DNA from: Styela clava
Taxonomy: Eukaryota
DNA: 64,000 nt
NCBI RefSeq assembly: GCF_964204865.1
Contig: NC_135260.1
Location: 19,778,001 to 19,842,000, forward strand
Direction: 5' to 3'
Below are positions 1,500 to 53,925 of this stretch, piece by piece (positions within the stretch are counted from its first letter, which is position 1; the number at the start of each line of letters is the position of its first letter). Both the position numbers and the translations under genes were made by a program. The notes beneath the pieces are model-generated. The model was given only the letters and a program-made list of their open reading frames with translations, was not told where the DNA came from and did not search any database.

Positions 1500-1721
1500 A
1501 TGGTATCTATAAGATATTGTAGACTTATGCTGAAAATTGTAATACTTCTTACACATTGGAGTATCATTGAAGCAAACGTCTTCACGAACTACAAAAGTTC
1601 GAAGAATTACACACTTCCAACTCAAGTTGGCGAAGCTGGAAAAACTATCTCTCTCACCTGCCAAGATGACTTTTACGTGAGCATTCCACAAAACAATATC
1701 GTTGTTGCTTGGAAGAAAAAG
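1500..1721 (+). CDS. Receptor exon 1: signal peptide and first half of Ig domain
   Basis: MLKIVILLTHWSIIEA...GEAGKTISLTC...VVAWKKK, then AAG|gtaac donor (phase 0). Confidence 0.8.
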
Positions 1722-4700: not shown

Positions 4701-7700
4701 TGTATAATCACTGCTATACTTAGGCGTCCTGATAAGTAGACATTTGAGTTATAATTGGTGTAATGTTTCTCATTTTAGTTGACATGGCAAAATTTCGTTT
4801 TGCATTATATATATAGGCCCCACTGAAAACGTCACTTTATTGAACATTTGAGATATGTTGTGTGTAATGTTTCTCGATATTTTTTTCAGAATTTCGTGTT
4901 TTAATTACATACCTTCTGAAATGGTCGGATGGTTGAAATTTTTTTTGAATGCTTCTCAATATTATTGCCATTCCAAAATATCATTTTGCATTTACATGAC
5001 ACACTTACGTAGCTGAGTAGATGACGATTCGCGATTTATTTTCTGTTTTGTTTTTCAATATGGTTTCAAAATTTTGTTTTATAATATTTGTCACTCTCAA
5101 GTTATCGGATAGGTGAACATTAGAGATAAATTTTAGCAATTTTCCACAACATTAAAATATGATTAGTATTCGAAATTCCGTATTTCAGTTAAATTTCACA
5201 CACTTAATAAGTGTGTGAGATATATTTTGTGTAAGATTTCTCAATACGATTCCAGAATTTTGTTTCAATAGTTGTATGCCACACTTAGGTGGTCGGATAT
5301 GCGGACATTTGAGATATATATTTTGTATTATTTCAGAATTTTCATTTCAATTTTTGTATGCCCCACTTAGGTGGTCGGATAGGTGGACATTTGAGATAAA
5401 CTTTGTGTAATATTTCTCAATATAATTTCAGAATTTTCATTTCAAATCTTGTATGCCACACTTAGATGGTCGGATAGGTGGACATTTGAGATAAACTTTG
5501 TGTATTATTTCTCAATATAATTTCAGAATTTTCATTTCAAATCTTATATGCCACACTTAGATGGTCGGATAGGTGGACATTTGAGATATACTTTGTGTAA
5601 TGTTTCTCAATATGATTTCAGAGCTTTCATTGTAATTGTTTTATGCCACACTTAGGTAGTCGGATAGGTGGACATTTGAGATATACTTTGTGTAATATTT
5701 CTCAATATAATTTCAGAATTTTCATTTCAAATCTTGTATGCCAGCCACACTTAGATGGTCAAATAGGTGGACATTTGAGATATACTTTGTGTAATGTTTC
5801 TCAATATGATTCCAGAATTTTCATTTTAATTCTTGTATGCCACACTTAGGTGGCCGGATAGGTGGACATTTGAGATATACTTTGTGTAATTTCAGAATTT
5901 TCATTTTAATTCTTGTATGCCACACTTAGGTGGCCGGATAGTTGGACATTTGAGATATACTTTGTGTAATATTTCTCAATATGATTTCAGAATTTTCATT
6001 TCAATTCTTGTATGCCACACTTAGGTGGCCGGATAGGTGGACATTTGAGATATACTTTGTGTAATATTTCTCAATATAATTTCAGAATTTTCATTTCAAA
6101 TCTTGTATGCCACACTTAGGTGGCCGGATAGGTGGACATTTGAGATAAACTTTGTGTAATATTTCTCAATATAATTTCAGAATTTTCATTTCAAATCTTG
6201 TATGCCACACTTAGGTGGCCGGATAGGTGGACATTTGAGATATATTTCTTGTAATGTTTCTCAATATGATTTCAGAATTTTCATCTCAATTCTTGTATGC
6301 CACACTTAGGTGGCCGGATAGGTGGACATTTGAGATATACTTCGTGTAATGTTTCTCAATGTGATTTCAGAATTTTCATTTTAATGTTTAATGCCACACT
6401 TAGGTGGCCGGATAGGTGGACGTTTGAGATATACTTTGTGTATTGTATCTCGATATGATTTCAGAGTTTTTATTTTAGTTGTTGTATGCCACACTTAAAT
6501 GTCCGAATAGGTGGACATTTGAGATATATTTTGTGTGATGTTTCTCAATATGATTTCAGAATTTTTATCTCAATTCCTGTATGCCACACTTAGGTGGCCG
6601 GTTAGGTGGACATTTGAGATATACTTCGTGTAATGTTTCTCAATATGATTTCAGAATTTTCATTTTAATGTTCAATACCACACTTAGGTGGACGTTTGAG
6701 ATATACTTTGTGTAATGTATCTCGATATGATTTCAGAGTTTTTATTTTAATTGTTGTATGCCACACTTAAATGGCCGAATAGGTGGACATTTGAGATATA
6801 TTTTGTGTGATGTTTCTCAATATGATTTAAGACTTTTTTTTCAATTGTTCTATGCCACCCTTAGGTGGTCGGATAAGTTGACATTTGAGATATATTTTGT
6901 GTAATGTTTCTCAATAGGGCTGGTGTCCATTTTTCAATTACGTGCCACATTTGAGTGACCGGATAGATGAACATTTGAAATCCAATTTGTGTGATGTTTG
7001 TCTTCATTAATGACATACCAGAATTTCCATTTACAATTATTTGTATAACTTAAAAGGCCGGATGGGGGGACATTTGAGATAAAGTTTGTGTGATATTTTT
7101 TCAATATTATTGGCATTTCCGAATTTCATTCTGCGATTACCTTCTGCGTATATATAATTTTCTTTTATTGTTTCTCAAAATAATTAGCACTTTCATATTT
7201 TATTTTACTATTATATACCACACTTCCTTTTTAAAATAATATTTCACACTTTAGCAATCAGATTGGTGATACGTTTGAAAAATATTTTGTGTATTGTTTC
7301 TCCCTATGTATGGCATTTCAAAATTTTGTTTTTCAAATATATGTCACGCTTATAGCCATATAGATATGCGGGTTTTTGAGGTATATTTTTCGCAATGTTT
7401 ATCAATATTATTGGAATGCCATAATTTTGACTTGGTATTGATATCTTGACACTTACAACATAGCATCTGTTTAATCTATATGTTGCACCATAGGGTTGGA
7501 ATAGGCGAACATTTGTGATATGCTCTGTGTATTTCTCAGTTTCAAATATATAACACGTTTGGATCAATTTGTTTCGATTTGTCTACCATCACGTTGCATT
7601 CCGAGTATTTTTTGATATGGAAGATTATTTCCAACACCAAACACAGTGCATCTCCCTTGCACGAAAGACTGGACATTGAAAAAAGAAATGCTATTTTTTG

Positions 7701-8062
7701 TGATAAGTATTGCTAGATGGTTCGAATCCATCGGAAATTAAAGCGAGGTCATACGCTTTAAAATGCGTATTAAAATAAAAGCAACATCATTTATGTAGAC
7801 ATCCAGGGCGACATATAAGAGGGGTCCGGCTTAGTGCCGAAATAGGCTAAAACATTTGGTGGTCTGAATTAAGTGGACAAATTAAGCGGACAAAAATTTT
7901 ATATCTGTTATCGAGAGGATTGTGTTGACTCTTTTTCTGCGTAGTTGTCAACGGCTCTCGCGCTCTCCAAGCACGTATTTAAAAACAATGATACGGGCAC
8001 AGGAACGACGTCCGCTTAAGTACTGCAATTATGGCAGGTCCGTTTAACTACCGTAATAGAGT

Positions 8063-8094
<32 letters not shown>

Positions 8095-11000
8095 AGAACC
8101 AGAGCCGAAAGTTCCAAATTCCATGAGTCTGGAGTGGGACAAATCCTTCTCTGACTGCACAGCCCGAAATTATGCGCAATTTTATGACAAAATGATAACA
8201 TAATCGTCACGCTAATAACCGAATTGCGTAAGTCATTTGGGCGATTTTGAGTTTTTTATAAATTAGGTATTTATGTAATGCTGCGCACCTGACTGTTAAC
8301 TGACTGTTGTTTTATTTTAAGAATTCCGAAACCCATAAAAATTGAGATTTAGTATGACGTGCACATTTGTCCAATTGTTTCGTCATAATGAATTATCATT
8401 TTACCGCAGGACTATTGTGACGTCACAAAGGCAAAATAACCTCAGCGAGGTATTTTCGAGTTTTTGAATCTCGGATTCTAGCTTAGCGCGTATTAGTTTG
8501 AATTTATACTACAGTATAGAAAAGCATGTACTTGTGATATTCACTGTCCGAGTCCAATTCACCTTGGTTGGCTTTTATATTGGGTGCATTGCTGTTTTAT
8601 TCTTTATATTTAATCTTAGTCTTATTTCGGTGGGTGTGCAGAACGTGTTATATTATTGAAATATATATTTTTGAACGTAAAAAATAATGTAATTGAAACT
8701 GATTAGCTATTTTGGGGATTCGACATTGTAGATACTGAAAATTACATTCGTTTTTGAAAAGGTGAAGTTTTCAGGACTGGTGCATATAATAAAGTTTCAA
8801 AATTGCGTATGTCCCCAAGTCATAGACACATATCTGCCTAAGTCACAGTGCGCCATTATGACGTGACTTAACTGCGTCATACAAATTATCTTAAATCCGG
8901 CTATGATCCAAAAATTGAACCATGGAAAATTATTGACTCTCAATGGCATAACAATATCATTAGGAAGTTTTTTACGTTTTTCTCAAAACTGCTAAAAATG
9001 ACTTACGCAATTCGGTTATTAGCGTGACGATATATATATATATAAATGAAATAATCAATTTGATATTCATATTGCAGCCAAAGTCGGAAAAATCATGGAT
9101 TCCTTTGCATCAGAATGCTCATATTTTAATCACAAACTGCTCTGAATCACAAAAAAGGCCAAAGGAATGCTTGGGCAAAAATGTTTTTTCTGCACTTACA
9201 ATTGAAAAGCTATCTTCAACTGATGCAGGAATATATGCGTGTTATGTGAAGACAAAATGGAAAGAAACTGTTATTGGAAAAACAAGATTGATAGTTGGAT
9301 GTGAGTCCTGCAAAATTCAATTTTTATTTATAGATATATTTCAATAAAAAGACAAGAGGAAATATTTTAGAAATCAAATTTGTTTTTCCATTTATACTAT
9401 ACAGTAGAGTTTGTAACACAATCATCTAAAAATTATTGCTGGTATTCAATGTGCCTGGTTTTTGAAGCTTTTGGTTTTGAGCTACTCAAAAATGACGAAT
9501 TCGAATCAAGGTTGATTTTTGGGTTGACAGTAGGTTGCAAAATATGATGGTACTGTGTTACTACCTCCTTATCGTCCGATACTTTCTAGGCACAAGGTGG
9601 ACTTACTTATATATTTTCAAGTATCTTTTTTTTTAATTCCATTTGATTCCTGCGCCCATTGTTCACATTCACCACTTCGATTTTCCGACAACGGATTCAA
9701 GCAAGCACTCGCTTCACATCGATTTGCTGGTACTGTACCTGCCTGTCCATATACTTGTACGTTACTCTCATTTTTAAACCATTCAACTTAGTCCCATAAT
9801 AACGTAAAATACAAAAAGAGCGAAGCAAGTGTATGATTCATATGGAAGATATTTGTTCGAATTTGACGTTTGAATAAGATATATATAAAATCATTTAGAT
9901 CCTCCTGAAGAACCACAATTGGCAGAAAACCATTGCATTTTCAAATGGGATGATGATTTGATGACGTGTTGTTGGAATCCAGGAAAGCAAACATTTATTG
10001 AAACTAACTTTCAAATGAAATATCAGATGTAAGATCGAAAGTTTCATTACATATACAGATCCGTACTTCATGAGCAAGCGGTTTACACTGCTTTTATTGT
10101 TGTTATTTGTATTACCCAACGATTAGTTTCAGGTTTTCTTTATTCATATTTTTACATCCATACGCACAAGATTAGATATGTATATATAAGTACAAAAATT
10201 TAAAATGTCGTTTTCTTTTTTTTACTGCGCTATTTGAAAAAAACTGACTAGAAATCATATAACTATCAGTAGAGGTTACTCCCAATCCTTCCTCAATGCC
10301 TTTGCGCTAGTGGATCCGTATGCGTATATTGCAAGGATGCTGTGCAGGAATAAAAATACCATAATATGCAATTCATGAGTCCTGCTGCACACTAACACTA
10401 ATGTTTTTCTTTAACGTTTCGTCTGACCAAGGTCAGACTTCCTCAGACAATATAGAAATCATAGATTGAAAAGTTTACAATAATCTCAGAAATGCATCAT
10501 TTTATCATTATTTTATCTCTTTGTGGGGTTGTTTGGTTATCATTTCTTAAAATGTTATTGGTCATGATGTGAAACTTTGGTAAATACAAATTTTTCAGGC
10601 ATGGAGACTTATTGAAAGTCGTAAATTGCTTGAAAACTGACAATTCTGATGTATGTTGCAAAGTCGATGTTGAAAATCGGTTTGAAAAACACAATATTTC
10701 ATTAGAAGCTTCAAACAACTTTGGAAAATCAGCGTCATTGAGCCATTCTGTCATTCCATCGCTACATGGTAATATATATATATTTTAAAGTTACTGATCA
10801 TACAATAATACATATTGCGTTTAATGTAAAAAACTGTGAGAGTAAAATTTAAAGTACTGTTCAAGCTCCTTCTGGAATTAGACAAGCTATTTTCAACACC
10901 ATTTTTATGAGTAAATACCAAAAATAAATAAAATGTGCAGTAAGTAGCGGTGAATAAATAAATTTTATCTTTGTGTCTATTGAAAAAATCTATTTTTAGA

Positions 11001-14000
11001 CCGAAAAGTTAAAATACAACCATCATTAAATATTTGTACACTCTGTGTATTTATTTTGTCCGTGACACAACGAAGAGAAGAATATTTTTTTAAATTTATT
11101 TTATCTCGTAGATATTCGATTATTTTGAAACGAGCAAAACAGAAACGATAAAATATTAGTTTGATTTTCCATATAAATTGACTTAAATGTTTGAATAGAT
11201 ATTTAACAAGAATAAAACAAGGAAAAATTTGAGTATTTTTCTGATAATATGTTATTTTTATATTGCAGTAATTCACAGTAAATAAACTATTACAACAATA
11301 AGCTAACAATACGAAGAACTGTGATAATTCTATTCTAAGCGGAATGCTTTTCGAGTGTTTCAAATTCGTTATTTCGATTAGAGTTAAATTTAGTTCAATT
11401 CAAGAATTGAATTATATATAACAGTGGTTCTCAAACGATGTGGCGCGTCCCGCAAGGGTGACATAGAAATTTTTTTGAGGGGGCGTGAAGCTAATTTAAA
11501 ATAAAAATATTTCATAGATTTGTCTTGCCCGCCTTATTTTGGATATTTATGTTCTATCCACGTATTTTCAACGTGTTTTTCAAATGAAACATTTTTTTGC
11601 CCTATTATCTGTTATTTGTAGCCTATTTTCAGCTAGTTATTTTTGAGGTGGGGCGCGAGACTTGACAAATTCTAAAAAAGGGGATTGAAAAGTGTGAGAA
11701 CCAGTTATATATAATGTATACTGAACACTTTTCTAAGTTTTTGAATGATCACTTTTGTAAAAACAAGTGTAACAAATGATATATATACAAATTTGGAAAC
11801 GGCACTTAATATCAATTCTATTTTCCTATATCAGTAAAACCAAAAGTTCCGACAAACCTGTCACTGAAATCAAAAATTGTCAACAATCAGATGAATGATA
11901 TTATAGTGAAGTGGAAGGAACCGAATAATGGATATATCAGTGCCTACGTTTACAGAGTTCGGTATTCTTTATCGCAACCAAGTCCTAATTGGAAGGCAAG
12001 TTATATTAATATTGTAATTAACTTTACAATCAACAACGTAGAGCGTCAAGAGGTTTCATCAACCACGACTCAATTTTGGTTCAATAAAAATCTATTACCG
12101 ACTCCGAGACAATAAAATTTCGACTTCCAAAGCTCTAGCATTGTAGTTGTTCAGGTTGAAAGTACGACTCAAACCACATTACCAACGAGAACGCAAATCG
12201 TACAAGTAGCCGCACTCCGACAATCAATATTATTCGATCTCATATGTTTAAATAGCTGTTTGAACCTTGGGCGTCGCTGCTTTGGTTCCCCACGGTTTCC
12301 CTTCTCTAGTGAAATGTGTATTGAATTTTATTCTTTATCCATTATTTCGCATTTGCTGGATATTGCATGATCTTATTGTTGAAACAAAACTTAGCTATTA
12401 TCCGTTCGAAACTACCATAGATATTTTTATATTATTATGTTTATTACCACTGTGTATTTATGCGTCACCAAAACGCCATTTAGTGCGTATAGAATGAGCA
12501 GAATTCGTGACATACTTGTCTGTACCTGATTGAACGTGAGGTTCAGTTCAACTAAGTGAAGAATAACATGCCTTATGTAGGGGTCAATGACATTGGCAAT
12601 GAATGAAAGGTGCCGTACCTTTACTTTATTACATGATTTCGCAATAAAATGTGGCAAGTTTGTGTTGACTGAAATGAAAGTTAAATATCTCGTTTGTCAT
12701 ATCATAACGATCAACCAAATTTATTTCTGCCCATATTCGATAGATTATCAAACCTATTTACACACTGTTGAAATTTTTGTTTTTACATGAATGTCGAAAT
12801 ACATTTCAATTAGGATTTCGATAGTGTATCGCATAAAATGGTGGTGCAGTATAAATCAAATAAACCGATACAAATAAATAGAATCTTTTGCTTTAACTCA
12901 CAGAAAACTATTGCGTTATTTGTTATGTTTTTGCACCGTTTTGCGTAGCTTGTGTGCGAAATATAAATGATATTTAAATTTTTTTGACACGCAGATCGAA
13001 TATGGAAATTCTGAGACAATATATGTTTTGGAAAATTTAAAGTCGTCGACTGAGTATGTGATTCAAGTATCAGCCAAACCTGACAATATTCATTCTATTA
13101 TTGATGGAGTTTGGAGTAGCTGGAGTAAAAGTGCTTCCATAAAGACGGATCTTACAGGTAGTTTTAACAAGGAAGTCCGGAACTAATGTTTTTTTTTAAC
13201 ATTTTTAAAACGTCTGCACAGACACTACAATAAATTAAATTTTATACAGTATCATACGAGCATCGTTCTGTACTTTAAAATAATTATTAAAAACTCTGCA
13301 TTGTAGTACTTTACAGACACTAAAAGCAAAATTCGCAATGTAATTTTATTTTGGTCCGAATTTGATATATTTTTAATTTTTCTTTTTTTCTAAAAAAACT
13401 CTAATTTTACCGTTATCGCAGCTTAGAATTGTTACCGCTCTACATTGGTAGTCTCACATATTTTAATTTTTGGTAATCCTAAATTTGTCTCAATTTACCT
13501 CCTAAAAAGTTTAGCGTTCGATGTATGCATTTTGATGTTGTAAAAGTAATCCCGTAGTATATGTACCAGGTTAGGGTTATTTAGTTCTATTACGAGTTCG
13601 TGGACTGTCTGTGTTCGCCAAGTGAATATAGGCCTATAGGTTCCAGTCACTTTATACAACTTGATGTAAAGTAGGCAAACAAAATTAGTTACCTCCATAT
13701 TGGTACATACACTCCTGGAGCGCCGTTGTAAATACAGGTTGAATGTTACATTATCGGGCTCATTCGCGCGGTCTAAAACACTTATTAGTTAGGCAAACGA
13801 ACCACGCCCCTTCAGTACGAGACCAATCGTTGATTGTGTTCCATTTTTTTAAAACCTGTTCATATATTTATAGTTCCTTCTAAGAAATTCACGTTCAAAC
13901 GACCGAAAACAACAATTTCATTTACCGGGAAAAATTATTCAACGGAAATAACTTGGCTTCCCTACGACAATCAACATGAAAGTGGATTCGTTGATAAAAT

Positions 14001-17000
14001 ATCATGTGGAAAGTGCGAAAGCAATGACGAGGTACTTATTTGTTCATGTCAGCCTATTTCGTGCGCTTATATATTTATCATTCTCCTTTGTTTCCTTTCT
14101 CATAATGTACATACTGGTTAGGAAATTTCGATCCTATTTAAATTCTGTACATGAATATTCAAAAAATACTAAAAGAAAAATGAATCTTGTTGAATTCTCC
14201 TACGATACGTGTTTTCATACTTGGCTCTGTTGAAAATATATTTCATTTCTCTTACCCAGTTTTGTCGTTCTTTTAACTCTGACATGGGCTACGGCCCACG
14301 GGACATATCCGACCCGTTGAATAATTCAATCTGACCCGCCTGATGCTGATGCACAGCTAAACTAAACCAAATTTTGTATGTTTGAGCTAAAAATAGTTCA
14401 AGGAATTTGTTGAGATTGCGATTAATTTATAATTTTGGCACGAAATCTATTGTTTTCCACTACATTGTAAGCATTGTTCGTAAAATGTGACTTTTTACGT
14501 CCACATACATGGCCCGCCAGTCCCAGTTGGGCAAAATTTTGGCCCCCCTTCTCCAAAAACCTTGCCCATCACTAAAACTGAAAAAAAAACTTATATACTT
14601 TATTTTGTTCCTTCAAATTCTGACATTTTATTTCGTTCACTGAAAGGTTCTATCAGAGCTTCATAACGCAACACAGTTTGTGTTCCGAACGTATTTTGGT
14701 GAAATTTGTTGCAGCGGCAGACATTGTAATAATGTTGGTTGTTCTGAAGAAGATTCAATGCACATCAGAATAGAAAAAGGTAATGATGCATTTGGTGATC
14801 AGTTTTCTTTGTGCTGCAATTCGAAATTAGCTATCAAAAATATTGTTTTCATAAAATTTGAATGACAAATATATTGAGGAAAGTCCTTATCAACGCACCG
14901 ACAACGCGTTGTTATTTTTCGTTGAATATTTGGCGCTCCAAAATTGAATGCATGGAGGTAACTAATTTTGTTCGCCTATTTTACATCAAGTTGTGTAAAG
15001 GGACTGGAAACCCATGGGCAGGGGGTATATTCACTTGGCTAACCCAGACAGTCCCCGAACTCGTAATAGAACTAAAATAAGGAAACCGGGATAAAACTAT
15101 AGCCTAACCTGGTACACTACGGGAGTACCGAATATTTTATACGACGTATTTACTCCCCTTCGCGCGGAACAAGCATTCATCACTAGCTAGGAAGATACTA
15201 TATTCATTAAAGACAGAAATCTTTCGATTTTCCCTCATCTATCAATTTTATTTTACTCCGCGGGTTAGATGGTTTCCATGGAGTTTGAACCTGAGATGTT
15301 ACCTACCATGTACACCACCAGAGATAAGTCTAACGCTTTAACCATTAAGCCACCGTGCTCATGTAATATAAGAGAAGTCTGGGGTACATCATGTCCCGAA
15401 ATATATTAAAATTCATATAAAATTATTCCAAGTACACTACAATAAGCTCAAACCAGAATTAAAATACAAGCTCGATACTATCATTTGAAACTTGAGGTCT
15501 AAGATCTAGATTCATCCAGTCGATCAAATTGCATAAATCAATCGTTGATGTTTTGCAATATTCAGGGAAAATTGCATTGATGTTACGTGTGGGAATAACT
15601 ATCGTAAGATTATGTTGTAAAAAGTGTTTGTTTGTATTGCTGACTCAGCCCGCTGCTATAAATTAAGGCAAGGTCGTAATTTCGAATAGGTTGGAAATAT
15701 AAAAACCCGATGTCGCTTAAACGCTGAGAAAGAAGATCCGATTATTTAATTTCTTTTCAGATCGATCAGTTATACGTTGTGTTTTGGACCCTGCTTAGGG
15801 TGCCGTTACGTTCTTTTTACAATGACAAACTGACTGCAAAACATTGCTAATGCGTGTTTACTCATCCAGCGTGTATGAATTTTTATAGATCAAATTTGCT
15901 TAGCGGGAGATGGTTGTCGGGTAGGTCAACATAACGCTGGTCATGCGAAATAGCGATTTATGAGAATGTCCATATGTTGTGGAACTGTAGAATTAATTCC
16001 TCTATTTACGGGCGGAAATGAACAAAATGAACGATAAAAATTTCCGTACTTTTTTCTTTCTCAATCATAAGTAGAAAACACTGACTGAAACGAAAAACCT
16101 TTTGCACGCCGTGAAGCTTTTGTATAATTAAAAGAAAAACTTTTTCAGCTCCCCCGACAATCAAAAACGTTACCATCAATAAGATGAATGAAACGTATCT
16201 ATTGGCCACATGGAATCCTCCGTCAAGATCTGAATCTTGTGTAATTAGAGTTTGCATACGAATGAGGTAATCAGTTTTTGCTTGCTCTAAAAAGAAAAAC
16301 GTGTTGTTATGTTAAATACTGAGTCTGAATTGAACATTAGAATTCAATATTTTCAAACACTTGATATTACCTCTGAATTGATATTATCCAATAAACATAC
16401 GTGAAAACTAATTCCATTAATTTACGTATCCTCAACGTATAACATGACTTTATATAAGGAGAAGATTTATGTTGTACAAATTATAATTATAGTGTGTATA
16501 GTTCTTCCTCGATTTTAACGCAAAAACATCAAAATCGTCTATAAATTCGTTCATACAACGAACAATTTTCCCATCAAAGTTTGCAATATTAGCAAATGCT
16601 AAAAATTTAAGTTTATAAAAAAGTGTGTATACGGTTATATATTTATTATTTTTATCAAATTTTTATCTAGATCTTCTGATTTGAATCAGACCGAAATTTT
16701 AAATCCAATCAATAATTGCGGATGGAATGGTTTTGAGATGCTAAAAACTATAGACGTTGATTGTGCATTAGGTGCCTTTTCAATTATTGATGATTGGAGT
16801 CCGTGTTTTCTGTACAGCATCACATTGGAAAATCATCACGATGAGATTATATCTCAATCCTATCCCAGCAACATTATATCCAGTAAGATATTGTTATTGT
16901 GCGCTACATGAGGACTGTTTGAAGTATAGAATAAACCTTGCTACATTTCTGTATCGCGTTTTGGGGTACTCCTGTAGTATGCGAATCAAGATGGCGAACA

Positions 17001-20000
17001 CCGGAACGTAGTATGTCCACCAGGTTGGGGTTAGGCCATGATTTTATTCCAATTTTCCTTATTGTAGTTCTATTACGAGTTCGGGGACTAGCCAAGTGAC
17101 TCCCGTAGTATTTGTACCTGTAATTATGGCCTAACCCTAACCTGGTACACATACTACGTTCCGGTGTCCGCCATCTTGGTTCGCTTACTACAGAAGTACT
17201 CGTTTTGGTAGTTTAGCAAATACAGTTTTATTGTCAACGGAACTTCATTGTTTTGAATTTTCCCCGGGAATATCGACTTTGTGGCTCGGACTAGAAGAAA
17301 TGCAAAACCGTCGGTATTTATTGTTTCTTTTTGCAAAAATATTCTTGCATGTAGGTATTGTAGCAAGTCAGTGCTCTAATAGTGTAGTATCCACCTGCAG
17401 AATAGGATCAATGCTAAAAAATTCCAAATTAATACTCATTTTTATCTTTCATATCAGTACAATGGCCTTTTGTTTTATTATTGACTGAATGCGAGTGAAT
17501 TTACATTCGCATTTCTTCGGAGAGTTGTATATATAATATTCAAAATATATTTCCGATAAAATTTTGAATGTTTTATTCCAGATAATTGGATACTTGATAG
17601 GATTGATCATTTTCATTCTACCGATTTATCAACAATCTCTAACTTTCAATTCGGCGTAATGTGGTCGACTATACCTTCGAAGATTTGTGAACATATGCAA
17701 CCGTACCTGATATATCAGCCGACATCTGGTTCCGAGTGCGGCGATGTGACCAAATGTAACACGGAGTTTATAAAAAAGGTTTTTTGATTAATAACTTAAA
17801 TTTACGATATTGTGGATACACAATGCCGAAACTCAGCCGTTGTTTGGGTATTGAGTCAAGCTGACGCTTCAAACCGAAATTTGGCATTGCTTCGCATTGT
17901 AAGCCATAGCTTCTGATGTAAACCAATTGAATGAGGTTATAATTCGAGCGATGAACTCAGGTACTAACATTTTCAATTTGAACCTTATATGGAGTCACTA
18001 GGATAGCATTTCGAGTATGTTGCTAACATCATACTCGATATACTGCAAATATTTGCGAAACTACACTCCCGCAAAGATACATAGGTGAAAGATTTGTCCT
18101 AATCGGAATATCTTGTATTCTTTTTAAGTTTATCGGTATGAGTAACACCACACATCGGCATAAAAAAATGTAAAACCCAATCAAATTTTTGTTATATCAT
18201 TCAGAACGGAGACTCTCGAATCCAGTGCAACAATATTTATCAACAACTTATCAACAGTTGACAGTTACACAGCTGTTTATGCCCATGACTTGACATTATG
18301 AGGTAATCTCGACATTCTATTCTTGCTAAAATTTCCGTGTTTTTACCAGGTGTCTTGCTCAGAAACAGCAACTGTAATATCGAACCATATTCATGGCAAC
18401 ACTGAGTATATGGCAGAAATGTATATGGTATGCAACGACCAAGATTTGTCTGACATTAATTGCCCAAGTTCTTTCCGCGTACCAGTTCCGGGGGCAAGGA
18501 TTAAAGTCACAACTGCTGTTGGAAGTGAGAACTTTTTTCCTATTTTTAGTTTTGTAGAAAATTCGTTATTGCATCAGATTTGTTGGGATATAGATACGAT
18601 TTATAGTCTAAAAAGATATTTGAATTAGCCGTTCCTGTACATAAAAGTATCTACGTTTTTAATAAAAATTGAAATGAAACTACCTACTATTTCCTGAGCC
18701 TCTGTTCTTAGGATTTTTATATTCCAAAAGCAATATAGGCAAAAATCGTCTCCGTGAAAGTGATCTTTACTCGACATGATGCTTTCCAAAAGCACAAAAA
18801 ACGCTTACAAGATTTGCCTAATTAACTTACTAATGGAAAGAGAAGATAATGGGATGGAAATATAATATATATAAACATTTCACCAAGTTTTCGAAATGAA
18901 TCATTCGACCTATATCGACTCACAGGCAGGTCTTTAGAAATTGTTTTATTTATTTTATAGAACCAGAAGTTCCTAATGATGTGAGCATGTCCTCTTCAGC
19001 ATCAGCCGAAAGTGTACTCACCTGGAACAAACCACTTCACTCAAATGGTGACGTTTATTACGAAATAATACAAGAAGCAATGCCGCCCACACAGGCATAT
19101 AACTTCCATACGTTCACAACAAAACAGACGAATTTAAAAGTAGATATAGGATGTCCGTCGTCACAAAGGAATGCAACTACGCTGCAATTTACTCTGGCCG
19201 CATTCAACAAACTTGATAATGGGACGAAACTCAGGAGTGAGAATACAACACTTGAAGATATCGAATGTGTCGTATTGGCAGGTAGGCTATGTGGAATTAG
19301 TTTAAACTGCGTTATTCGTGAAAGTAAAAACTTGTATTTGCATACCCAATGCCCCCCTATCTTATTAATATGATGCTATACATAAGTTTATAATGAACAA
19401 ACGTGTATAAGCGTATGTAACTCAATTTTATTTAGCTTATTTTAGCTATGTTTTTTTAGATGTCCAGAGTTTACTCTCGCATATGCATTTCATACAGCGT
19501 GCATGTCTTTCTGTACGACATGAATGAAAGAAATAGTTTTATGACTGTTCACCATATATATATATATATATTATCTTCCACGTAAGGTTCGCCGATACGG
19601 CGTCGAAAATTTAAATAAGGCCCTTAAAAATTTCTACGTTGTCGAAAAAAATGTAATTTGACTAGTGATACAAAATTTTGAAAATGAGTTTATATTTCGC
19701 CCCACTGCTGATAATTTACAAATAACTGGCTAATCTAATCCCATGACCGACATGGGCTTATAACCGGATGAAAGGCCGTTGTACTTCATATAATTAAGCC
19801 GTCTTATCAACTTTCCTCTCCTCCGGGATAAATATGTAAATCCCAATCCTGTCCTATTTCTCGAACTCCAAGAAAATTGAGTTTAAATACACAGCGCTCC
19901 ATTATCGTGCAACAGACGATGTGGTCTGCGATCCGACAATCGTGTCACTCATAAATGCGTATACATTGGAGCTATCAGCGTATTGGCAGTGAATATTGTA

Positions 20001-23000
20001 CCGCCTGTTGAAACCGCCGGCAGTAAATTTTCTGCGTTGGCCTACATTTGAAAAAATAGTCAACAGTTATAGGTAAAGCACATCTTCGAAATATCGTCGC
20101 CAAAATCAAAATCCAGCTTTGTTTGCTCTGCTCGAAACATATAGTTCACCGTTCTCGAATGTAATATTTGAACAAAAAAAAAAGTACGTTTCGTAAAAGT
20201 CTGTCATTGTTTTGGGCTGTCAAGCGTCTCGCGTTGATTAAATATAATGGCGGCAGAACGAAAGGTGCGAGAATAACTTTCTAGTGTCTCAGTTGTGTTT
20301 TTAGAAATTTAAATAAATTAGGAACTAAGCTGCTTAAGAATAAATTTTCGAGTCGCGACCGATCAATAAGTAATTGCAGACATTTGTCTTATAATTTCGA
20401 TTGTTGGACCACAATTGATTTATTTTTATTTGCCATTTCTGCGTAATTAATGAAAGATTCGATGTCTGATATATATATAAACGAAATATAATAATACCTG
20501 CGTATGTATCTGTTATAGAACCGATGAAATTCACAACGAACATCACAACAGTCATCGTAGTCTGCATCGCGATTTTAATTTTTATTATGGCATCAATCTT
20601 TGTGTATTATCATCGGGGAAAGTTGACAAAAAAGATTCAAGAAAGCTTTTGGCCAACTATACCTGAACCACGCATCAACCCTAACGTTACTTTGACGAAC
20701 TCGCTGACCTCAGACTATCATCGGGAGGATAACCATAGATCTGAAGATCCAGAGGAAACGGTTTCCGCCATTGAAAATGGGAATGTTACCAACAACGACC
20801 AAAATCCGCATATGATAACTTTTACACGTGTCAATACTAGGTAAGGTTGATATACATATTTGAACATTTTTACAATATTTTCGAATCTGCGCATTTTTGT
20901 GAATGAGAATCCTACTGGCCTTACAAATATGGGTCCACCACAACGGATACTGAAATTAATTTTGACAAAATGCTTGTAATACAGAATGCCGAAAAACACT
21001 GACTCAACACTACTTATTCGAGAAGAGGGCATTGAACATCAGATGTTTCAAAAACGATTATCATCAACACGTGAGTAAATATTTTTATTTTTTGGGGGTT
21101 GAAATTTTTGAAAACATAATGAGTGTATATACAGTCGCTCTATAAGAATACTTTAGAGCAGTCTCCGGAAAAGTTTTTTAAAGTGAGGCCCAAATAGTAA
21201 AATGGAAAAGGGTTCAAGGTCCAACAACTTTGTTGTAAATTTTAAATTTAACCACGTAATAAACTTGTTAATGGACATTTTATTTGTTTAGCTGAAATGA
21301 ATGTAATTTATGATCGTTTCATATATAAACAAAAACTGTTTGGAATTTTTATATATGTAATGTTAGATTTATAGAACGTTTTTGTGTAACTGAATTTTAT
21401 TGGAGGCCCACTAGAAAATGCTCGGTCGCCCTCGATTGGACCGCGGCCCACAGTTTGCCGGCCGTTGCTTTGGAGCAGTGGTTCTCAACCATTTTCAGTT
21501 CGCGGATCGGTAACATTTCAAAACGAATTTTGCGGACCGGCGGGCGGACCTTCAACATTAACCAAAAATGTCAGGAACACAAAACATAATCAAAAGAATG
21601 CAATTACGACAAAAGTAGGCGGTGCAAAAGAAGACAATTCAATTCAATAAAAAATTTGCTGCTGTCTTTTTTGATCTTATACGTGTTAAACGCAGTTCTA
21701 ATGAAGTTTCTGGAAGGCGAAGTAGGGCGTTGACTTCCGCACGTTTTTCTTAGATTTGCGGGTTTCATTGCGTCGTTTGAATTTTGGCGCAGACTAGGCA
21801 CATGAAAAATGGAAACCTAGCTCCAAATACTTCTTATCATACTGCCTAATACAGTCTCCCTTTCGTTTTTTGCTTGTTTTTGCGTGGTCCATATCAACAT
21901 TGCTGCAAGGTCGTTTCTGGGCATGTTGTAAATTGAAGTAGCAGTCTCTGTCCTGTCAACACCACTTGGCTTTCACCGCTGGGTTTCTTTTGAAAGGACT
22001 GGATAATACTTTGCAGTTTATTTGCCTCCATTTTACTATCAAACCTCGCTAAATAATAGGCCTACCTTCAAATTACGGAACGTGTGAACTGCGAAGTCCT
22101 CAATCAGGTACCGTACCATGTGCTATCAAACTCCTCCGTTATGACGTTAGTCGCCGTTATGAGGTCATAGACTTATCGAATATTTAGTCGGCCAGGGCTT
22201 GAAATGGGCAGAGGACCCCTCACCGGGTTGAATTGTTAGACGAATACCGGTACTACAAATCAATAAGAGTTAAAAAAAAAAAATCACAAAGTTAATAGAC
22301 ATGTCGTCAATACTTTGTATTTTGCAATCTGCTAATGATATATTGATATTGGAATATTTGGCGGACCGGCAGCAAGGTTGCCACGGATCGGCGGTTGAGA
22401 ACCACTGCTTTACAGCAAACGCTAGCTCCACTATTATATATCGAACAGTCGATGAAAAAATTAATATTTTGAGTAATATTGAGCACGTTATATTAGGTTT
22501 CATTTTGAAAGAGATAGGAACAAATGGCATTTTTTAAGCGGTAGTTAACAGTGAGTATGCCTCTGCATATTGCCTTTCAATTCACATTCAAAGCATATTT
22601 ATTCAAGCTGGAGCACGGGTGTGTATAGACTGAACATCAATAGTATTTTACTGAGTTAAAAAAGATCCATAGCTCACACACTTCCGTCGAATCGTTTACC
22701 TAGTACATTTCTAATATATTTTACTATTTCATTATTAGATGGACATACGAATTCAATAGCCACTAATGGTGACCAGAATAACGTACCACAACCAATCCCC
22801 GCACATTCTCACATCGACATTCAATATGTTGCCGAAGCTGGGGAGGCGCTAAAATCGGACAGAGACCCGGAATATCGATCGTTAAGTTTGAGCTCATCTG
22901 AGTGTAGCACAAATAACAGATCGGAAAGTACTTCATCTGGATGTTTGAAGCGATATGTTAAAGTGTTGAATAGTTCGAATGAAAAAGTGACATTGCCACC

Positions 23001-24269
23001 ACATGGGCATGAATGCGTAACATACAATGTATCAAACGTGCAAGCAACTGAAACAAATAATGAACACAGTTTACGACAAGCCATCAGCGAAGATTATCTT
23101 GCTGATGTCGCTGGCTTTACCGGTAACACACATTCAAATGATACCTCACAATTACATAATATGATGAAAGCCGAGCGGAAATTCAATTGGTCAGATGAAG
23201 ACATAAGACTACCAAATATAGAAAATCATATGGTAAATATCATTTTACATTTGGTCGGGAAATTCGAAATCCATTTACATTTATTGATAATTTTGGCCAC
23301 GAAGTGGACCTATGGGTCGTTTTGATATTATGTTGTTGTTAGTATTCTTGTTCTTGTGAAAAACCGCCTTTTTCTGCTACTATTGGACCAATTGCTTGGA
23401 GATTTTCAGTAGTTAAAGATTGTTGTTGTCACCATAAAGAGATTCCTTTTTTCATTTGTAAAATTTCTGTGATCTCGATAGGATTCATTTTTTACTTTGA
23501 AGTTTTGTGTGATGACATCATCAGAATTGCGCACCGTGTGGCGATTTTGCGATCGCATTTTAGCGATCTGGCGGTCAAGTTTTTCGAGTGTAAGAGATTT
23601 CATACTACTGCGTTTTGGTCCCCGTGTCCATATATTTGAGCATTGCTCTCTCGTTTTTGTAAGTAGATTTTTCTGAGCAATTCGTCTGGTTGCTATTTTG
23701 ATTTTACATAAACAATATCTATACCATACAATAAAATCTTCCGGCGACTTGAATTCCTTTTCACGAATTAGTATTAACAATTATTCTGATTATTGCAGGA
23801 ATATTTGACAGAAGAACATCCTTATAAGCCACTGTGGCAAGATGATGTTATTCGGAGCATTGACATAGATATGGAAGATGGCGGCTTTAGACTGTCTGAC
23901 TTAAACGTTGCGTCAGATAAAACGGATAATTTTTTAAACACTATAGAATTGAATAAAGATCCTGATCTGGATTCATATTTACTCGAAAATTCTCGTCAAA
24001 AAGAATCTTCTTGTGATTCTCTTCTTATGAAAAGGTTATCATCTTCTAGCGGAATCCAAGAAGACCTAAATGATTCGGAAGACTTAAATTATGAAATGGA
24101 AAAATTTTTAGGAAACTGTTTTCCTACTGAAACATCTAAACACGATTTCGAAGAAAATATTTCCCAAAACACAAAGTTATTGGACGATAAAAGGTTTGTA
24201 ATAGATCCAGTGTGCGAAGAAGAATCTTATATCGATCTTGAAACAAATCCTTTAGTAATAGAATGTTAG
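1500..24269 (+). CDS. Class I cytokine receptor, gp130/IL6ST/LIFR/Domeless-like, ~1251 aa, 17 coding exons
   Basis: Exons 1500-1721, 9078-9300, 9899-10028, 10599-10768, 11835-11995, 12995-13157, 13874-14031, 14647-14779, 16149-16266, 16671-16882, 17582-17778, 18350-18524, 18961-19281, 20519-20840, 20985-21070, 22739-23232, 23799-24269. All phases are compatible and total 3756 nt with no internal stop. Motifs: signal peptide, Ig (TISLTC...W...DAGIYAC), YPPEEP..CI..MTCCWNPG, EASNNFG..VKP, WSSWS, FN3 repeats, TM, Box1 FWPTIPEP. The start could instead be the ATG at 1527. Confidence 0.9.
2605..8060. mobile_element. Large non-autonomous TIR element flanked by (TA)n, containing a satellite array
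   Basis: tctaatacggtagttaa (2605) is the near-exact inverse of ttaactaccgtaataga (8044-8060). A second inverted pair lies at 2681-2704 and 7873-7896. (TA)n on both sides. Confidence 0.7.
5270..6920 (+). repeat. 95-bp tandem satellite, about 17-18 conserved units, with degenerate units extending to about 4500 and 7530
   Basis: Unit gccacacttaggtggccggataggtggacatttgagatatactttgtgtaat...; unit starts at 6014, 6109, 6204, 6299 (period 95). Confidence 0.97.
8203..9031. mobile_element. MITE/non-autonomous DNA transposon with 36-bp perfect TIR
   Basis: atcgtcacgctaataaccgaattgcgtaagtcattt (8203-8238) and its exact reverse complement (8996-9031); (TA)n on the right. Confidence 0.88.
9078..9300 (+). 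CDS. Receptor exon 2: second half of Ig domain
   Basis: ttgcag acceptor; SALTIEKLSSTDAGIYAC...TRLIVG; gtgag donor. Confidence 0.9.
9899..10028 (+). CDS. Receptor exon 3: cytokine-binding homology region, N-terminal part
   Basis: YPPEEPQLAENHCIFKWDDDLMTCCWNPGKQTFIETNFQMKY matches the gp130-family PPxxP-C-(x)n-CxWxPG-T-F pattern; absent from the ORF track. Confidence 0.88.
10599..10768 (+). CDS. Receptor exon 4: cytokine-binding homology region
   Basis: ...VVNCLKTDNSDVCC...ISLEASNNFGKSASLSHSVIPSLH; canonical AG/GT boundaries. Confidence 0.85.
11422..11705. mobile_element. hAT (Charlie-like) MITE
   Basis: cagtggttctca...tgagaaccagt termini. Confidence 0.65.
11835..11995 (+). CDS. Receptor exon 5 (ends at a GC donor)
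   Basis: VKPKVPTNLSL...IIVKWKEP...YRVRYS...WK, followed by AAG|GCAAGT. Confidence 0.82.
12995..13157 (+). CDS. Receptor exon 6 with WSxWS motif
   Basis: YVLENLKSSTEYVIQVSAKP...GVWSSWSKSASIKT; WSSWS at 13112-13126. Confidence 0.92.
13545..13724 (-). mobile_element. GG-terminal MITE family, copy 1
   Basis: Perfect 8-bp TSD gttgtaaa; shares internal sequence with the other copies. Confidence 0.85.
14932..15129 (+). mobile_element. GG-terminal MITE family, copy 2
   Basis: ggcgctcc...ggagtacc termini; perfect TSD gaatattt. Confidence 0.88.
16965..17200. mobile_element. GG-terminal MITE family, copy 3 (palindromic variant)
   Basis: Long inverted arms; perfect TSD cgttttgg. Confidence 0.88.
19735..19856 (+). 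mobile_element. SINE 3' fragment (same family as 53514-53925)
   Basis: ...cttatcaactttcctctctccgggataaatatgtaaatccc matches the SINE tail. Confidence 0.7.
20519..20840 (+). CDS. Receptor exon 14: transmembrane helix and JAK-binding Box1
   Basis: VIVVCIAILIFIMASIFVYY, a basic stretch, then FWPTIPEP (20647-20670; compare gp130 IWPNVPDP). Confidence 0.92.
21159..21467. mobile_element. hAT-like MITE
   Basis: cag...ttg ends with ggccc subterminal motifs; flanked by ctttagag / ctttggag. Confidence 0.6.
21476..22407. mobile_element. hAT (Charlie-like) non-autonomous element
   Basis: Perfect TIR cagtggttctcaacc / ggttgagaaccactg; imperfect TSD ctttggag / ctttacag. Confidence 0.85.
23799..24269 (+). 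CDS. Receptor terminal exon (acidic cytoplasmic tail)
   Basis: ttgcag acceptor, phase 0, open to TAG at 24269; YKPL and YIDL motifs. Confidence 0.8.
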   Translation, partial: EYLTEEHPYKPLWQDDVIRSIDIDMEDGGFRLSDLNVASDKTDNFLNTIELNKDPDLDSYLLENSRQKESSCDSLLMKRLSSSSGIQEDLNDSEDLNYEMEKFLGNCFPTETSKHDFEENISQNTKLLDDKRFVIDPVCEEESYIDLETNPLVIEC

Positions 24270-24412
24270 CTTCACACACGCAAATGTATTATATGAAAGA
24301 TTGTCTCATATATCAATATAATATTATTATTCGTCACGTAGTGAACCTATGGATCGTTTTGTTATTAGGTTGTTGTGCTTGTTGTCATAGTCATTACCTA
24401 CTGAATTACCCG

Positions 24413-53513: not shown

Positions 53514-53925
53514 AGGATAGGATTTACATATTTATCCCGGGGGAGAGGAAAGCCGATAAGATGGCTTATCAATATGGCGAACCACGGACTCTCGTCCGGT
53601 TACCATTCCAAGTCGGGTATGGGATTAGGTATATTGTTTGTTTTCGGAAGCATGGACTTGGACTCTCGTCCGGTTACCATTCCAAGTCGGGTATGGGATT
53701 AGGTATATTGTTTGTTTTCGGAAGCATGGACTTGGTGGTGGAGGAAGCCGTAACCGACCAGCGGTTACGTGAACCACCCAACGGCGGCGAGGAGTCCAGC
53801 AATCCTCTCGCACATAAACATCTCTGCATGGGATTCGAACCTGCGAACCCACGCAGAGTAATTAGAGGTGCGGAGGCGAGCGTATTCCTAATGATTAGCC
53901 CGTTGAGCCACACCGCCGCGCCGGC
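53514..53925 (-). mobile_element. tRNA-derived SINE with an internal ~72-bp duplication
   Basis: Minus strand: A box tggctcaacgg, B box ggttcgaatcc, tail ...gtaaatcctatcct; a second decayed copy lies at about 53080-53330. Confidence 0.85.

What the first reader, a model, noticed from the sequence alone, without database searches (positions are those of the whole stretch)
1500..24269. Complete invertebrate gp130-type JAK/STAT cytokine receptor, mostly invisible in the ORF track
Seen: 17 phase-compatible exons give SP-Ig-CHR(WSSWS)-FN3s-TM-Box1-tail. Established: this layout defines tall class I cytokine receptors (gp130, GCSFR, LIFR, Domeless). Inference: the sequence is too divergent to assign to one vertebrate paralogue and looks like a pre-vertebrate member whose helical cytokine ligand is unknown. 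It is the best candidate here for an uncharacterised signalling system.
Basis: partly seen in the sequence, partly recalled or inferred. Interest (0 to 1): 0.8.

Follow-up and report, generated by a model that had tools for sequence, protein, structure and literature searches.

The report
Sea-squirt gp130-type cytokine receptor gene

Summary
On the + strand, from ATG 1500 to TAG 24267-24269, I find 16 coding exons (3705 nt, 1234 codons) with all intron phases compatible. They encode signal peptide, Ig domain, cytokine-receptor homology region (C-x10-C-C-W, WSSWS), four further FN3-size modules, a TM helix, Box1 (WPTIPEP) and a 400-residue tail.

A 4969-nt contig from an RNA-like run joins exons 6-12 exactly. 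Contigs from a second study confirm two of these junctions. The other junctions rest on splice sites and phase alone.

Single exons, searched apart, hit almost only class I cytokine receptors among solved structures, with gp130 best (E 3e-8 using a two-paralogue profile). JAK and STAT genes are present in the genome.

The family assignment is right, but this is not a new signalling system. Ciona has a "gp130-like" receptor with the same Ig-CHD-FBN-TM-Box1 layout (Liongue & Ward 2007). Orthology to it is likely but could not be tested here.

New here is a second gp130-type gene about 12 Mb away on the same chromosome. It has an identical intron-phase series, SSEWS in place of WSxWS, and its own Box1.

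The ligand remains unknown.

The parts
1500..1721 (+). Exon 1: start codon, signal peptide (1500-1574, MVSIRYCRLMLKIVILLTHWSIIEA), first half of the Ig domain; donor AAG|GTAACA, phase 0
   Evidence: An in-frame TGA lies two codons upstream. Paralogue B has the same layout and phase. The junction was not checked by RNA.
9078..9300 (+). Exon 2: second half of the Ig domain (LTIEKLSSTDAGIYACYV); ends in phase 1
   Evidence: Pfam V-set E 0.001, I-set E 0.011. PDB hits are generic Ig domains, VEGFR1 E 9.5e-5. Splice sites.
9899..10028 (+). Exon 3: first half of the CHR N-domain, with C-x10-C-C-W at 9934-9975; phase 1 in, 2 out
   Evidence: PDB phmmer: gp130 E 0.0015, aligned to gp130 D2 residues ~103-139; the hit list is class I cytokine receptors only. 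The profile with paralogue B gives gp130 E 3.2e-8.
10599..10768 (+). Exon 4: second half of the CHR N-domain, with the second Cys pair (C-x8-C-C, 10627-10659); phase 2 in, 1 out
   Evidence: Splice sites and phase; Cys spacing. No Pfam or PDB hit on its own. Assigned by position between exons 3 and 5.
11835..11995 (+). Exon 5: first half of the CHR C-domain (FN3 A-C strands); GC donor AAG|GCAAGT, phase 0
   Evidence: Pfam fn3 E 0.03; generic FN3 hits in PDB. RNA contigs of X1 and X10 carry 'AG' immediately before exon 6, which fits this donor and not the GT at 12014. Paralogue B has its intron at the same position.
12995..13157 (+). Exon 6: second half of the CHR C-domain, with WSSWS at 13112-13126; ends in phase 1
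   Evidence: PDB phmmer: gp130 E 0.0047, aligned on its WSxWS region (257-295); the rest of the list is TPOR, IL-12Rb2, CRLF1, PRLR, CNTFRa, EPOR. Joined to exon 7 in RNA contigs of two studies.
13874..14031 (+). Exon 7: first half of membrane-proximal module 1
   Evidence: Joined to exons 6 and 8 in X1 record 1 and X10 records 4 and 5. Colinear match in paralogue B.
14647..14779 (+). Exon 8: second half of module 1, Cys-rich (ICCSGRHCNNVGCSE)
   Evidence: RNA junctions. 52% identity over 21 residues to paralogue B (NCNNVGCSE). No Pfam hit.
16149..16266 (+). Exon 9: first half of module 2 (APPTIKNV...LLATWNPP)
   Evidence: RNA junctions. Pfam fn3 E 0.11 at profile start.
16671..16882 (+). Exon 10: second half of module 2
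   Evidence: RNA junctions. No Pfam hit.
17582..17778 (+). Exon 11: first half of module 3
   Evidence: RNA junctions. Weak colinear match in B.
18350..18524 (+). Exon 12: second half of module 3
   Evidence: RNA junction to exon 11. Donor GGAA|GTGAGA.
18961..19281 (+). Exon 13: module 4, a whole FN3 domain in one phase 1-1 exon
   Evidence: A profile with B and two Logan fragments hits FN3 domains in PDB: titin A77-A78 E 2.8e-5, RPTP sigma E 7.9e-5. The B counterpart passes the Pfam fn3 cut-off. The AF2 model is a 7-8-stranded beta sandwich, pLDDT 71.
20519..20840 (+). Exon 14: TM helix (20542-20610), positive stop-transfer HRGKLTKK, Box1 WPTIPEP (20650-20670), acidic stretch; donor TAG|GTAAGG, phase 2
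   Evidence: Aligns with B's TM and Box1 (VYYH...IWPSVPRP).
22704..23232 (+). Exon 15: cytoplasmic tail (tyrosines in YVAE, YRSL, YVKV, YNVS, YLAD)
   Evidence: The acceptor is the only one compatible with the phase-2 donor at 20840, and it is not verified by RNA. No Pfam family.
23799..24269 (+). Exon 16: C-terminal tail (YLTE, YKPL, YLLE, YEME, YIDL) and stop TAG 24267-24269; the 3' UTR follows
   Evidence: X1 holds about a third of the sampled words of 18300-24300, matching the exon share.

Best explanation
The locus is an intact, transcribed gene for a type I membrane protein of the class I (haematopoietin) cytokine-receptor superfamily, of the tall gp130-like group.

The protein runs: signal peptide, one Ig domain, a two-domain cytokine-binding homology region, four membrane-proximal FN3-size modules, one TM helix, Box1, and a tail of about 400 residues with 12 tyrosines.

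Most likely mechanism (inferred from the family, not shown here): an as yet unidentified secreted four-helix-bundle cytokine binds the elbow of the homology region, and possibly the Ig domain. This dimerises the receptor, either with itself or with the paralogue found on the same chromosome. The rigid FN3 stalk brings the two Box1-bound JAK molecules together. JAK then phosphorylates tail tyrosines, which recruit STAT and probably SHP/SOCS through their SH2 domains.

Because no YxxQ is present, docking would use other motifs. Candidates are YRSL, YKPL and YIDL (YxxL) and YVKV (YxxV).

In evolutionary terms it is most probably the Styela counterpart of the Ciona 'gp130-like' receptor.
For: Shown:
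- Gene structure: 16 phase-compatible exons and one open frame of 1234 codons.
- Expression and splicing: a 4969-nt contig of run X1 joins exons 6-12 exactly. X10 contigs from another study join 6-7 and 7-8. X1 has zero depth in unique intron bins, while DNA run X2 covers them. X1 holds 0.33 of the words of 18300-24300, which matches the exon fraction.
- Family: the exon 3 and exon 6 peptides alone hit almost only class I cytokine receptors in PDB. gp130 is best, at the homologous positions D2 103-139 and D3 257-295. The two-paralogue profile of exon 3 gives gp130 3e-8, IL-13Ra1 3e-7, IL-12Rb2 9e-6, IL-23R 1e-5, then CRLF1, GCSFR, LIFR. The exon 6 profile gives IL-12Rb2 2e-4 and gp130 9e-3.
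- The paralogue's exon 3 counterpart hits Pfam LIFR_D4, IL6Ra-bind and EpoR_lig-bind.
- Motifs C-x10-C-C-W, C-x8-C-C, WSSWS, TM and WPTIPEP are present.
- Downstream parts exist in the genome: JAK with FERM_F1, FERM_F2, Jak1_Phl, SH2 and kinase domains, and STAT_bind.

Literature: the Ciona gp130-like receptor has the same topology and a gp130-like splice pattern (PMC1963337). Ciona has one JAK, two STATs, one SHP and three SOCS (PMC3296744).
Against: - No binding, JAK association or STAT activation was tested; the whole signalling mechanism is inferred.
- There is no YxxQ STAT3-type motif in the tail.
- Modules 1-3 of the stalk give no significant FN3 hit exon by exon. Their fold is inferred from size, exon pairing and W/Y patterns.
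- Exon 4 has no detectable similarity on its own.
- Nine of the 15 junctions lack RNA support, including the Box1-exon to tail junction.
- No IL-6, LIF/OSM or CNTF family member was detected in the genome, though that search is insensitive.
- Orthology to Ciona gp130-like could not be tested, because no Ciona sequence was reachable.
- The species name rests on earlier scan notes only.
Confidence: 0.85

Rival explanations
1. The receptor does not work as a homodimer. It is one chain of a heteromeric complex with the second gp130-type gene (paralogue B, G000:C14 ~7.848-7.857 Mb), in the way gp130 pairs with LIFR, OSMR or IL-27Ra in vertebrates.
For: - B exists, looks intact, and has the same 14 intron phases, good splice sites, its own Box1 (IWPSVPRP) and a long Tyr-rich tail.
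- The two are old duplicates at 25-52% identity per exon.
- Exon-13 fragments from other organisms group with A and not B: 55 and 50 bits against 28. This suggests both lineages have been kept for a long time.
- Profile searches find exactly these two genes in the genome.
Against:
- Nothing shows co-expression or interaction.
- Two paralogues can equally be two independent homodimeric receptors.
- Liongue & Ward inferred homodimeric signalling for Ciona on the basis of a single chain (PMC1963337).
Confidence: 0.2
2. It is a direct 1:1 orthologue of one particular vertebrate receptor (IL6ST/gp130 itself) rather than a pro-orthologue of the whole gp130/LIFR/LepR/IL-12Rb group.
For: gp130 is the best-scoring solved structure for both CHR exons.
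Against: - The margins over IL-13Ra1, IL-12Rb2 and IL-23R are small.
- For the WSxWS exon profile, IL-12Rb2 scores better than gp130.
- There are four, not three, stalk modules, and no YxxQ.
- The vertebrate group diversified after the tunicate split according to PMC1963337 and PMC12284397.
Confidence: 0.08
3. It is an Ig/FN3 adhesion or guidance-type receptor, or a decoy, that only superficially resembles cytokine receptors and does not use JAK/STAT.
For: - The Ig half-domain and exons 5 and 13 resemble generic Ig and FN3 domains of adhesion molecules and RPTPs.
- There is no YxxQ.
- Stalk modules 1-3 are atypical and Cys-rich.
Against: - The CHR N-domain exon is specific for cytokine receptors at E 3e-8.
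- WSSWS is aligned with gp130's WSxWS.
- The membrane-proximal WPxIPxP Box1 is conserved between the two paralogues.
Confidence: 0.04
4. The exon chain is a chance or decayed (pseudogene) arrangement.
For: None beyond the lack of RNA evidence for nine junctions.
Against: A spliced 4969-nt RNA contig, a second study's contigs, an uninterrupted 1234-codon frame and canonical splice sites.
Confidence: 0.01

Closest known systems
Ciona intestinalis 'gp130-like' class I cytokine receptor (cigp130-like, BN000969; Liongue & Ward 2007, PMC1963337)
   Same: It is a tunicate receptor with Ig-CHD-FBN-TM-Box1 topology. Its CHD is split into several exons in a gp130-like splice pattern. It is expressed (ESTs), its ligand is unknown, and it has never been characterised functionally.
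   Different: The sequences could not be compared here, so orthology is inferred and not tested. Ciona was reported to have only one such chain, whereas this genome has two. My model has 1234 residues; the EST coverage listed in the paper's Table 1 runs to residue 1124.
Vertebrate gp130 / IL6ST (solved structures such as 1BQU, 3L5H, 8D82)
   Same: It is the best sequence match of the CHR exons, at the homologous positions. It shares the N-terminal Ig domain, the C-x(9-10)-C-x-W and WSxWS hallmarks, the FN3 stalk, a single TM helix, a WPxVPxP-type Box1, and the absence of a kinase domain.
   Different: - Identity is low; the match is detected only at E 1e-3 to 1e-8 per exon.
- There are four stalk modules instead of three, and three of them are Cys-rich.
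- The Ig domain has a canonical DxGxYxC motif.
- There are no YxxQ STAT3 sites.
- No IL-6-family ligand or alpha-receptor is known in tunicates.
Drosophila Domeless
   Same: It is an invertebrate JAK/STAT receptor of the same superfamily, with a cytokine-binding module followed by FN3 domains. It is thought to act without a gp130-style alpha chain.
   Different: Dome's CHD is encoded by a single exon (PMC1963337), whereas here it is split into four exons as in vertebrates. Its ligands, the Unpaired proteins, are known. No sequence comparison was made here.
Paralogue B in the same genome (G000:C14 ~7,847,780-7,857,120, + strand)
   Same: It has the same exon number up to the TM exon, an identical intron-phase series, C-x10-C-C-W, the VQVSAKP strand, the NCNNVGCSE motif in stalk module 1, and TM plus Box1.
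   Different: - Identity is 25-52% per exon.
- SSEWS replaces WSxWS.
- The gene is compact (about 9.5 kb against 22.8 kb).
- The tail is unrelated.
- Expression was not tested.

Membership tests
Class I (haematopoietin) cytokine receptor superfamily | N-terminal CHR domain with two conserved Cys pairs, C-x(9-10)-C-x-W ... C-x(10-15)-C | tested here: met
   C-x10-C-C-W at 9934-9975. The second pair is C-x8-C-C at 10627-10659, slightly shorter than the consensus spacing. The exon aligns to gp130 D2.
Class I (haematopoietin) cytokine receptor superfamily | WSxWS motif near the end of the C-terminal CHR domain | tested here: met
   WSSWS at 13112-13126, aligned with gp130's WSDWS.
Class I (haematopoietin) cytokine receptor superfamily | Significant sequence similarity of the CHR to known members | tested here: met
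   Exon by exon only. E 1.5e-3 and 4.7e-3 for single sequences; 3.2e-8 and 2e-4 for two-sequence profiles. The hit lists are almost purely class I receptors.
Class I (haematopoietin) cytokine receptor superfamily | Single-pass type I membrane protein without a kinase domain, and with a membrane-proximal proline-rich Box1 | tested here: met
   Signal peptide, one 23-residue TM helix, and WPTIPEP 13 residues after the TM. No Pfam domain in the tail exons.
Class I (haematopoietin) cytokine receptor superfamily | Binds a four-helix-bundle cytokine and signals through associated JAK | not testable with these tools
   JAK and STAT genes exist in the genome. No ligand candidate was found.
Tall gp130-like group (group 2: gp130, LIFR, OSMR, GCSFR, IL-12Rb2, LepR, Dome) | Ig-like domain N-terminal to the CHR | tested here: met
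   Exons 1 and 2. Pfam V-set, I-set and ig at E 1e-3 to 2e-2, all below the gathering cut-offs because only half a domain is scored. PDB Ig hits down to 9.5e-5.
Tall gp130-like group (group 2: gp130, LIFR, OSMR, GCSFR, IL-12Rb2, LepR, Dome) | Several FN3 domains between the CHR and the membrane | tested here: inconclusive
   Module 4 (exon 13) is FN3 by profile. Module 2 has a weak fn3 start. Modules 1 and 3 give no hit exon by exon. Four modules are inferred from RNA-supported exon pairs and sizes. A whole-domain test needs the joined protein, which was left out.
Tall gp130-like group (group 2: gp130, LIFR, OSMR, GCSFR, IL-12Rb2, LepR, Dome) | Closest CHR similarity to group 2 members | tested here: met
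   gp130, IL-12Rb2, IL-23R, GCSFR, LIFR and IL-31RA dominate the list. IL-13Ra1 and CRLF1 also appear.
Vertebrate IL6ST (gp130) orthologue | YxxQ STAT3-docking motifs in the tail | tested here: not met
   0 of 12 tail tyrosines are in a YxxQ motif.
Vertebrate IL6ST (gp130) orthologue | Phylogenetic placement inside the IL6ST clade, or conserved synteny | not tested
   No full-length comparison sequences were reachable. The literature reports no conserved synteny for the Ciona receptor (PMC1963337).
Orthologue of Ciona gp130-like | Reciprocal best similarity or a shared clade with BN000969 | not tested
   The Ciona sequence is not held by any tool here, and the paper's supplements contain only vertebrate alignments. 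Topology and splice pattern agree with the description.

The most novel reading that the evidence does not exclude
Tunicates have a two-chain gp130-type receptor system. The canonical chain (this gene, WSSWS) and the divergent paralogue B (SSEWS) would form a heteromeric receptor for an undiscovered tunicate helical cytokine. Heteromeric 'shared-chain' cytokine signalling would then predate vertebrates instead of arising with their receptor expansion.
Probability: 0.15. Interest if true: 0.6.

Novelty: new member of a known kind. Interest (0 to 1): 0.3.

Why it matters
The ligand of the pre-vertebrate gp130-type receptor is a long-standing gap. IL-6-family cytokines and leptin have not been found in tunicates, amphioxus or, until recently, lampreys (PMC12284397).

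This report gives an RNA-supported exon model of the Styela receptor. It also shows that the genome carries two divergent chains with the same gene structure. Together these give concrete ectodomains for ligand fishing and multimer-prediction screens.

The second chain also qualifies the 2007 inference, drawn from Ciona, that tunicates have a single chain that must signal as a homodimer.

The gene itself is an expected member of a family already described in sea squirts, so finding it is not surprising.

Tried and rejected
1. Full-library HMMER search with exon 13. It returned no self protein and no full-length relative. The hits were long multi-FN3 proteins and two unnamed Logan exon fragments, P0003 and P0006. 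I therefore could not see how public annotation names this gene.

3. Pfam on single exons. Only sub-threshold Ig and fn3 hits came back for this gene, because each exon is half a domain. This says nothing against the folds.

4. Exon 4 alone against PDB gave nothing.

5. Pfam IL6, LIF_OSM and CNTF models against the genome gave no hit. The tool itself warns that this does not show absence.

6. AF2 model of exon 13 (pLDDT 71), searched with Foldseek and VIA-align. The best Z was 5.1 and the matches were generic beta sandwiches, so this was not discriminating.

7. I tried to check the 20840->22704 junction from the contig length and poly(A) signals. The result was inconclusive: the only ATTAAA is at 24861, while the arithmetic puts the contig end near 25104.

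8. I looked for an extra exon or alternative donors between exons 14 and 15 and found none.

9. The supplements of Liongue & Ward contain no Ciona sequence.

This means no whole-protein Pfam or InterPro scan, no whole-protein fold, no length-matched homologue search and no CHR phylogeny.

Full report
**What is there**

The window is AT-rich (about 35% G+C) and comes from a 377-Mb assembly (G000, contig C14:19,778,001-19,842,000). Earlier follow-up notes of this scan attribute the assembly to the sea squirt Styela clava. I did not verify the species independently.

On the + strand, stop-free stretches with canonical splice sites give 16 coding exons, from ATG 1500 to TAG 24267-24269. A TGA lies two codons upstream of the ATG. 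The exons sum to 3705 nt, which is 1234 codons plus the stop. The intron phases run 0,1,2,1,0,1,0,1,2,1,0,1,1,2,0, so every junction keeps the frame.

Intron 5 uses a GC donor (AAG|GCAAGT at 11996).

**Transcription and splicing**

One RNA-like public run (X1) holds a third of the sampled words of 18300-24300. That is about the exon fraction of the stretch.

I laid contigs on 12990-18989. X1 record 1 is a 4969-nt contig. It lies on the genome as seven abutting pieces that correspond exactly to exons 6-12, allowing for the usual two-letter AG ambiguity. It has 1333 nt more on the upstream side and 2478 nt more downstream. That is enough to hold the remaining ten exons plus UTRs.

- Contigs of a run from another study (X10) join exons 6-7 and 7-8.
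- X1 has zero depth in the unique intron bins.
- The DNA run X2 covers introns and exon-intron borders continuously.
- Both X1 and X10 carry 'AG' directly before exon 6. This fits the GC donor after ...AAG and not the alternative GT donor at 12014.

Only one reads call was available, so junctions among exons 1-5 and 12-16 rest on splice sites and phase. The weakest is 20840->22704, chosen because it is the only phase-compatible donor/acceptor pair. Arithmetic on contig length and poly(A) signals did not settle it.

**What it encodes (exon by exon)**

Whole-protein domain scans, folding, length-matched homologue searches and a phylogeny were therefore left out.

- **Exon 1** carries a signal peptide and the first half of an Ig domain.
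- **Exon 2** carries the second half, with DAGIYAC. Pfam gives V-set at E 1e-3, and PDB hits are generic Ig domains down to 9.5e-5.
- **Exon 3** (42 residues, C-x10-C-C-W) hits only class I cytokine receptors among 177,635 PDB sequences. gp130 is best at E 1.5e-3, aligned to its D2 strand region 103-139.
- **Exon 4** has the second Cys pair but no detectable similarity alone.
- **Exon 5** is a generic FN3 N-terminal half.
- **Exon 6** carries WSSWS. It hits gp130 at E 4.7e-3, aligned on its WSDWS. The rest of the list is TPOR, IL-12Rb2, CRLF1, PRLR, CNTFRa and EPOR.
- **Exons 7-12** form three pairs of FN3 size. They are Cys-rich and have no significant Pfam hit.
- **Exon 13** is a whole phase 1-1 domain. 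In a four-sequence profile it hits FN3 domains such as titin A77-A78 (2.8e-5) and RPTP sigma (7.9e-5). Its AF2 model is a beta sandwich (pLDDT 71), but fold searches were not discriminating.
- **Exon 14** has a 23-residue TM helix, HRGKLTKK, and Box1 WPTIPEP.
- **Exons 15-16** are a tail without known domains. Counting the membrane-distal part of exon 14, the tail has 12 tyrosines and none in YxxQ. YRSL, YKPL, YIDL and YVKV are present.

**A second gene of the same kind**

Searching the whole genome with exon 3 and exon 14 found weak matches 12 Mb upstream on the same contig. I fetched the region. It holds a compact + strand gene at about C14:7,847,780-7,857,120.

- Its exons are colinear with exons 3, 5, 6, 7, 8, 11, 13 and 14 of the window gene (tblastn).
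- Its best splice sites give the identical phase series 0,1,2,1,0,1,0,1,2,1,0,1,1,2.
- It has C-x10-C-C-W, the strand VQVSAKP, SSEWS where WSxWS is expected, the shared NCNNVGCSE motif, and TM plus Box1 (VYYH...IWPSVPRP).
- Its CHR N-domain exon hits Pfam LIFR_D4 (2e-4), IL6Ra-bind (6e-4) and EpoR_lig-bind.

Two-sequence profiles sharpen the family assignment.

| Profile | Best PDB hits |
|---|---|
| Exon 3 | gp130 3.2e-8, IL-13Ra1 2.6e-7, IL-12Rb2 8.5e-6, IL-23R 1.4e-5, then CRLF1, GCSFR, LIFR |
| Exon 6 | IL-12Rb2 2e-4, gp130 9e-3 |

The same profiles find only these two loci in the genome. Two unnamed exon-13-like fragments from Logan assemblies match the window gene much better than the paralogue (55 and 50 bits against 28). 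The duplication therefore probably predates the split from those unknown organisms. Expression of the paralogue could not be tested.

**Pathway context**

The genome encodes a JAK. An open frame of at least 851 codons carries FERM_F1, FERM_F2, Jak1_Phl, SH2 and kinase domains. It also encodes at least one STAT (STAT_bind over cut-off). Pfam models for IL6/GCSF, LIF/OSM and CNTF found nothing, but the tool warns that this does not show absence.

**Comparison with what is known**

- Liongue & Ward (2007, PMC1963337) reported exactly two class I receptors in Ciona intestinalis. One is 'cigp130-like', with Ig-CHD-FBN-TM-Box1 topology, a gp130-like multi-exon CHD and EST support. They inferred homodimeric signalling because no partner chain was seen.
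- Liongue et al. (2012, PMC3296744) list one JAK, two STATs, one SHP and three SOCS in Ciona.
- A 2026 survey (PMC13203501) includes a Ciona receptor among invertebrate 'IL6R'-named proteins. These have a signal peptide, an Ig domain, an IL6R domain, 3-4 FN3 domains and a TM region.
- A 2025 paper (PMC12284397) states that leptin and IL-6-family cytokines have not been identified in tunicates.

The window gene is therefore a new member of a known kind, very probably the Styela counterpart of cigp130-like. I could not test that orthology.

**Mechanism**

What is shown is the gene structure, its transcription and splicing for exons 6-12, CHR family membership, the motifs, and the presence of JAK and STAT in the genome.

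What is inferred from the family is the signalling route. An unknown four-helix cytokine binds the CHR elbow, perhaps with the Ig domain, and dimerises the receptor. Box1-bound JAKs trans-activate and phosphorylate tail tyrosines. STAT and SHP/SOCS then dock by their SH2 domains, here necessarily on non-YxxQ motifs. Whether the active complex is a homodimer or an A/B heteromer is open.

**Verdict**

The claim of an uncharacterised signalling system is overstated. Interest is modest. The useful additions are the RNA-supported exon model, the four-module stalk and the second paralogue.

Noticed in passing
G000:C14 ~7,847,780-7,857,120 (+); L009:9780-9971 and L011:111-9120: A second, compact gp130-type class I cytokine receptor gene. 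It has the same intron-phase series as the window gene, SSEWS instead of WSxWS, Box1 IWPSVPRP and an unrelated Tyr-rich tail. The words I searched in the earlier scan notes did not turn it up.
   Followed up: partly
window 5326-6916 (intron 1): A 95-bp satellite of about 17 copies at 86% matches, inside the 7.3-kb first intron. It lies within the element that another finding (s1-823138) describes.
   Followed up: partly
window 13580-13700, 14950-15100, 16966-17199: Copies of a very high-copy short repeat sit in introns 6, 8 and 10. Read depth there is thousands of times that of the unique sequence in every run. The copy at 16966-17199 is a complete hairpin (78-nt arms, 90% complementary, 78-nt spacer), which looks MITE-like. 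The copies at 13580-13698 and 14952-15076 are inverted relative to each other and flank exons 7 and 8.
   Followed up: partly
window 11996-12994 (intron 5): A GC-AG intron with a consensus GC donor (AAG|GCAAGT). The corresponding intron of the paralogue uses a normal GT donor (CAT|GTGAGT).
   Followed up: partly
L006 (G000:C13:10,390,165-10,393,365, - strand): The genome's JAK homologue (FERM_F1, FERM_F2, Jak1_Phl, SH2, kinase) lies in an uninterrupted open frame of at least 851 codons; the genome search reports 1119. It therefore appears to be largely intronless.
   Followed up: partly
window 45199-46317 (- strand): A 372-codon ORF with several hydrophobic segments. It is the orphan 7TM candidate of finding s1-823139, and the only long ORF in the rest of the window apart from a 152-codon one at 53561-54019.
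   Followed up: no
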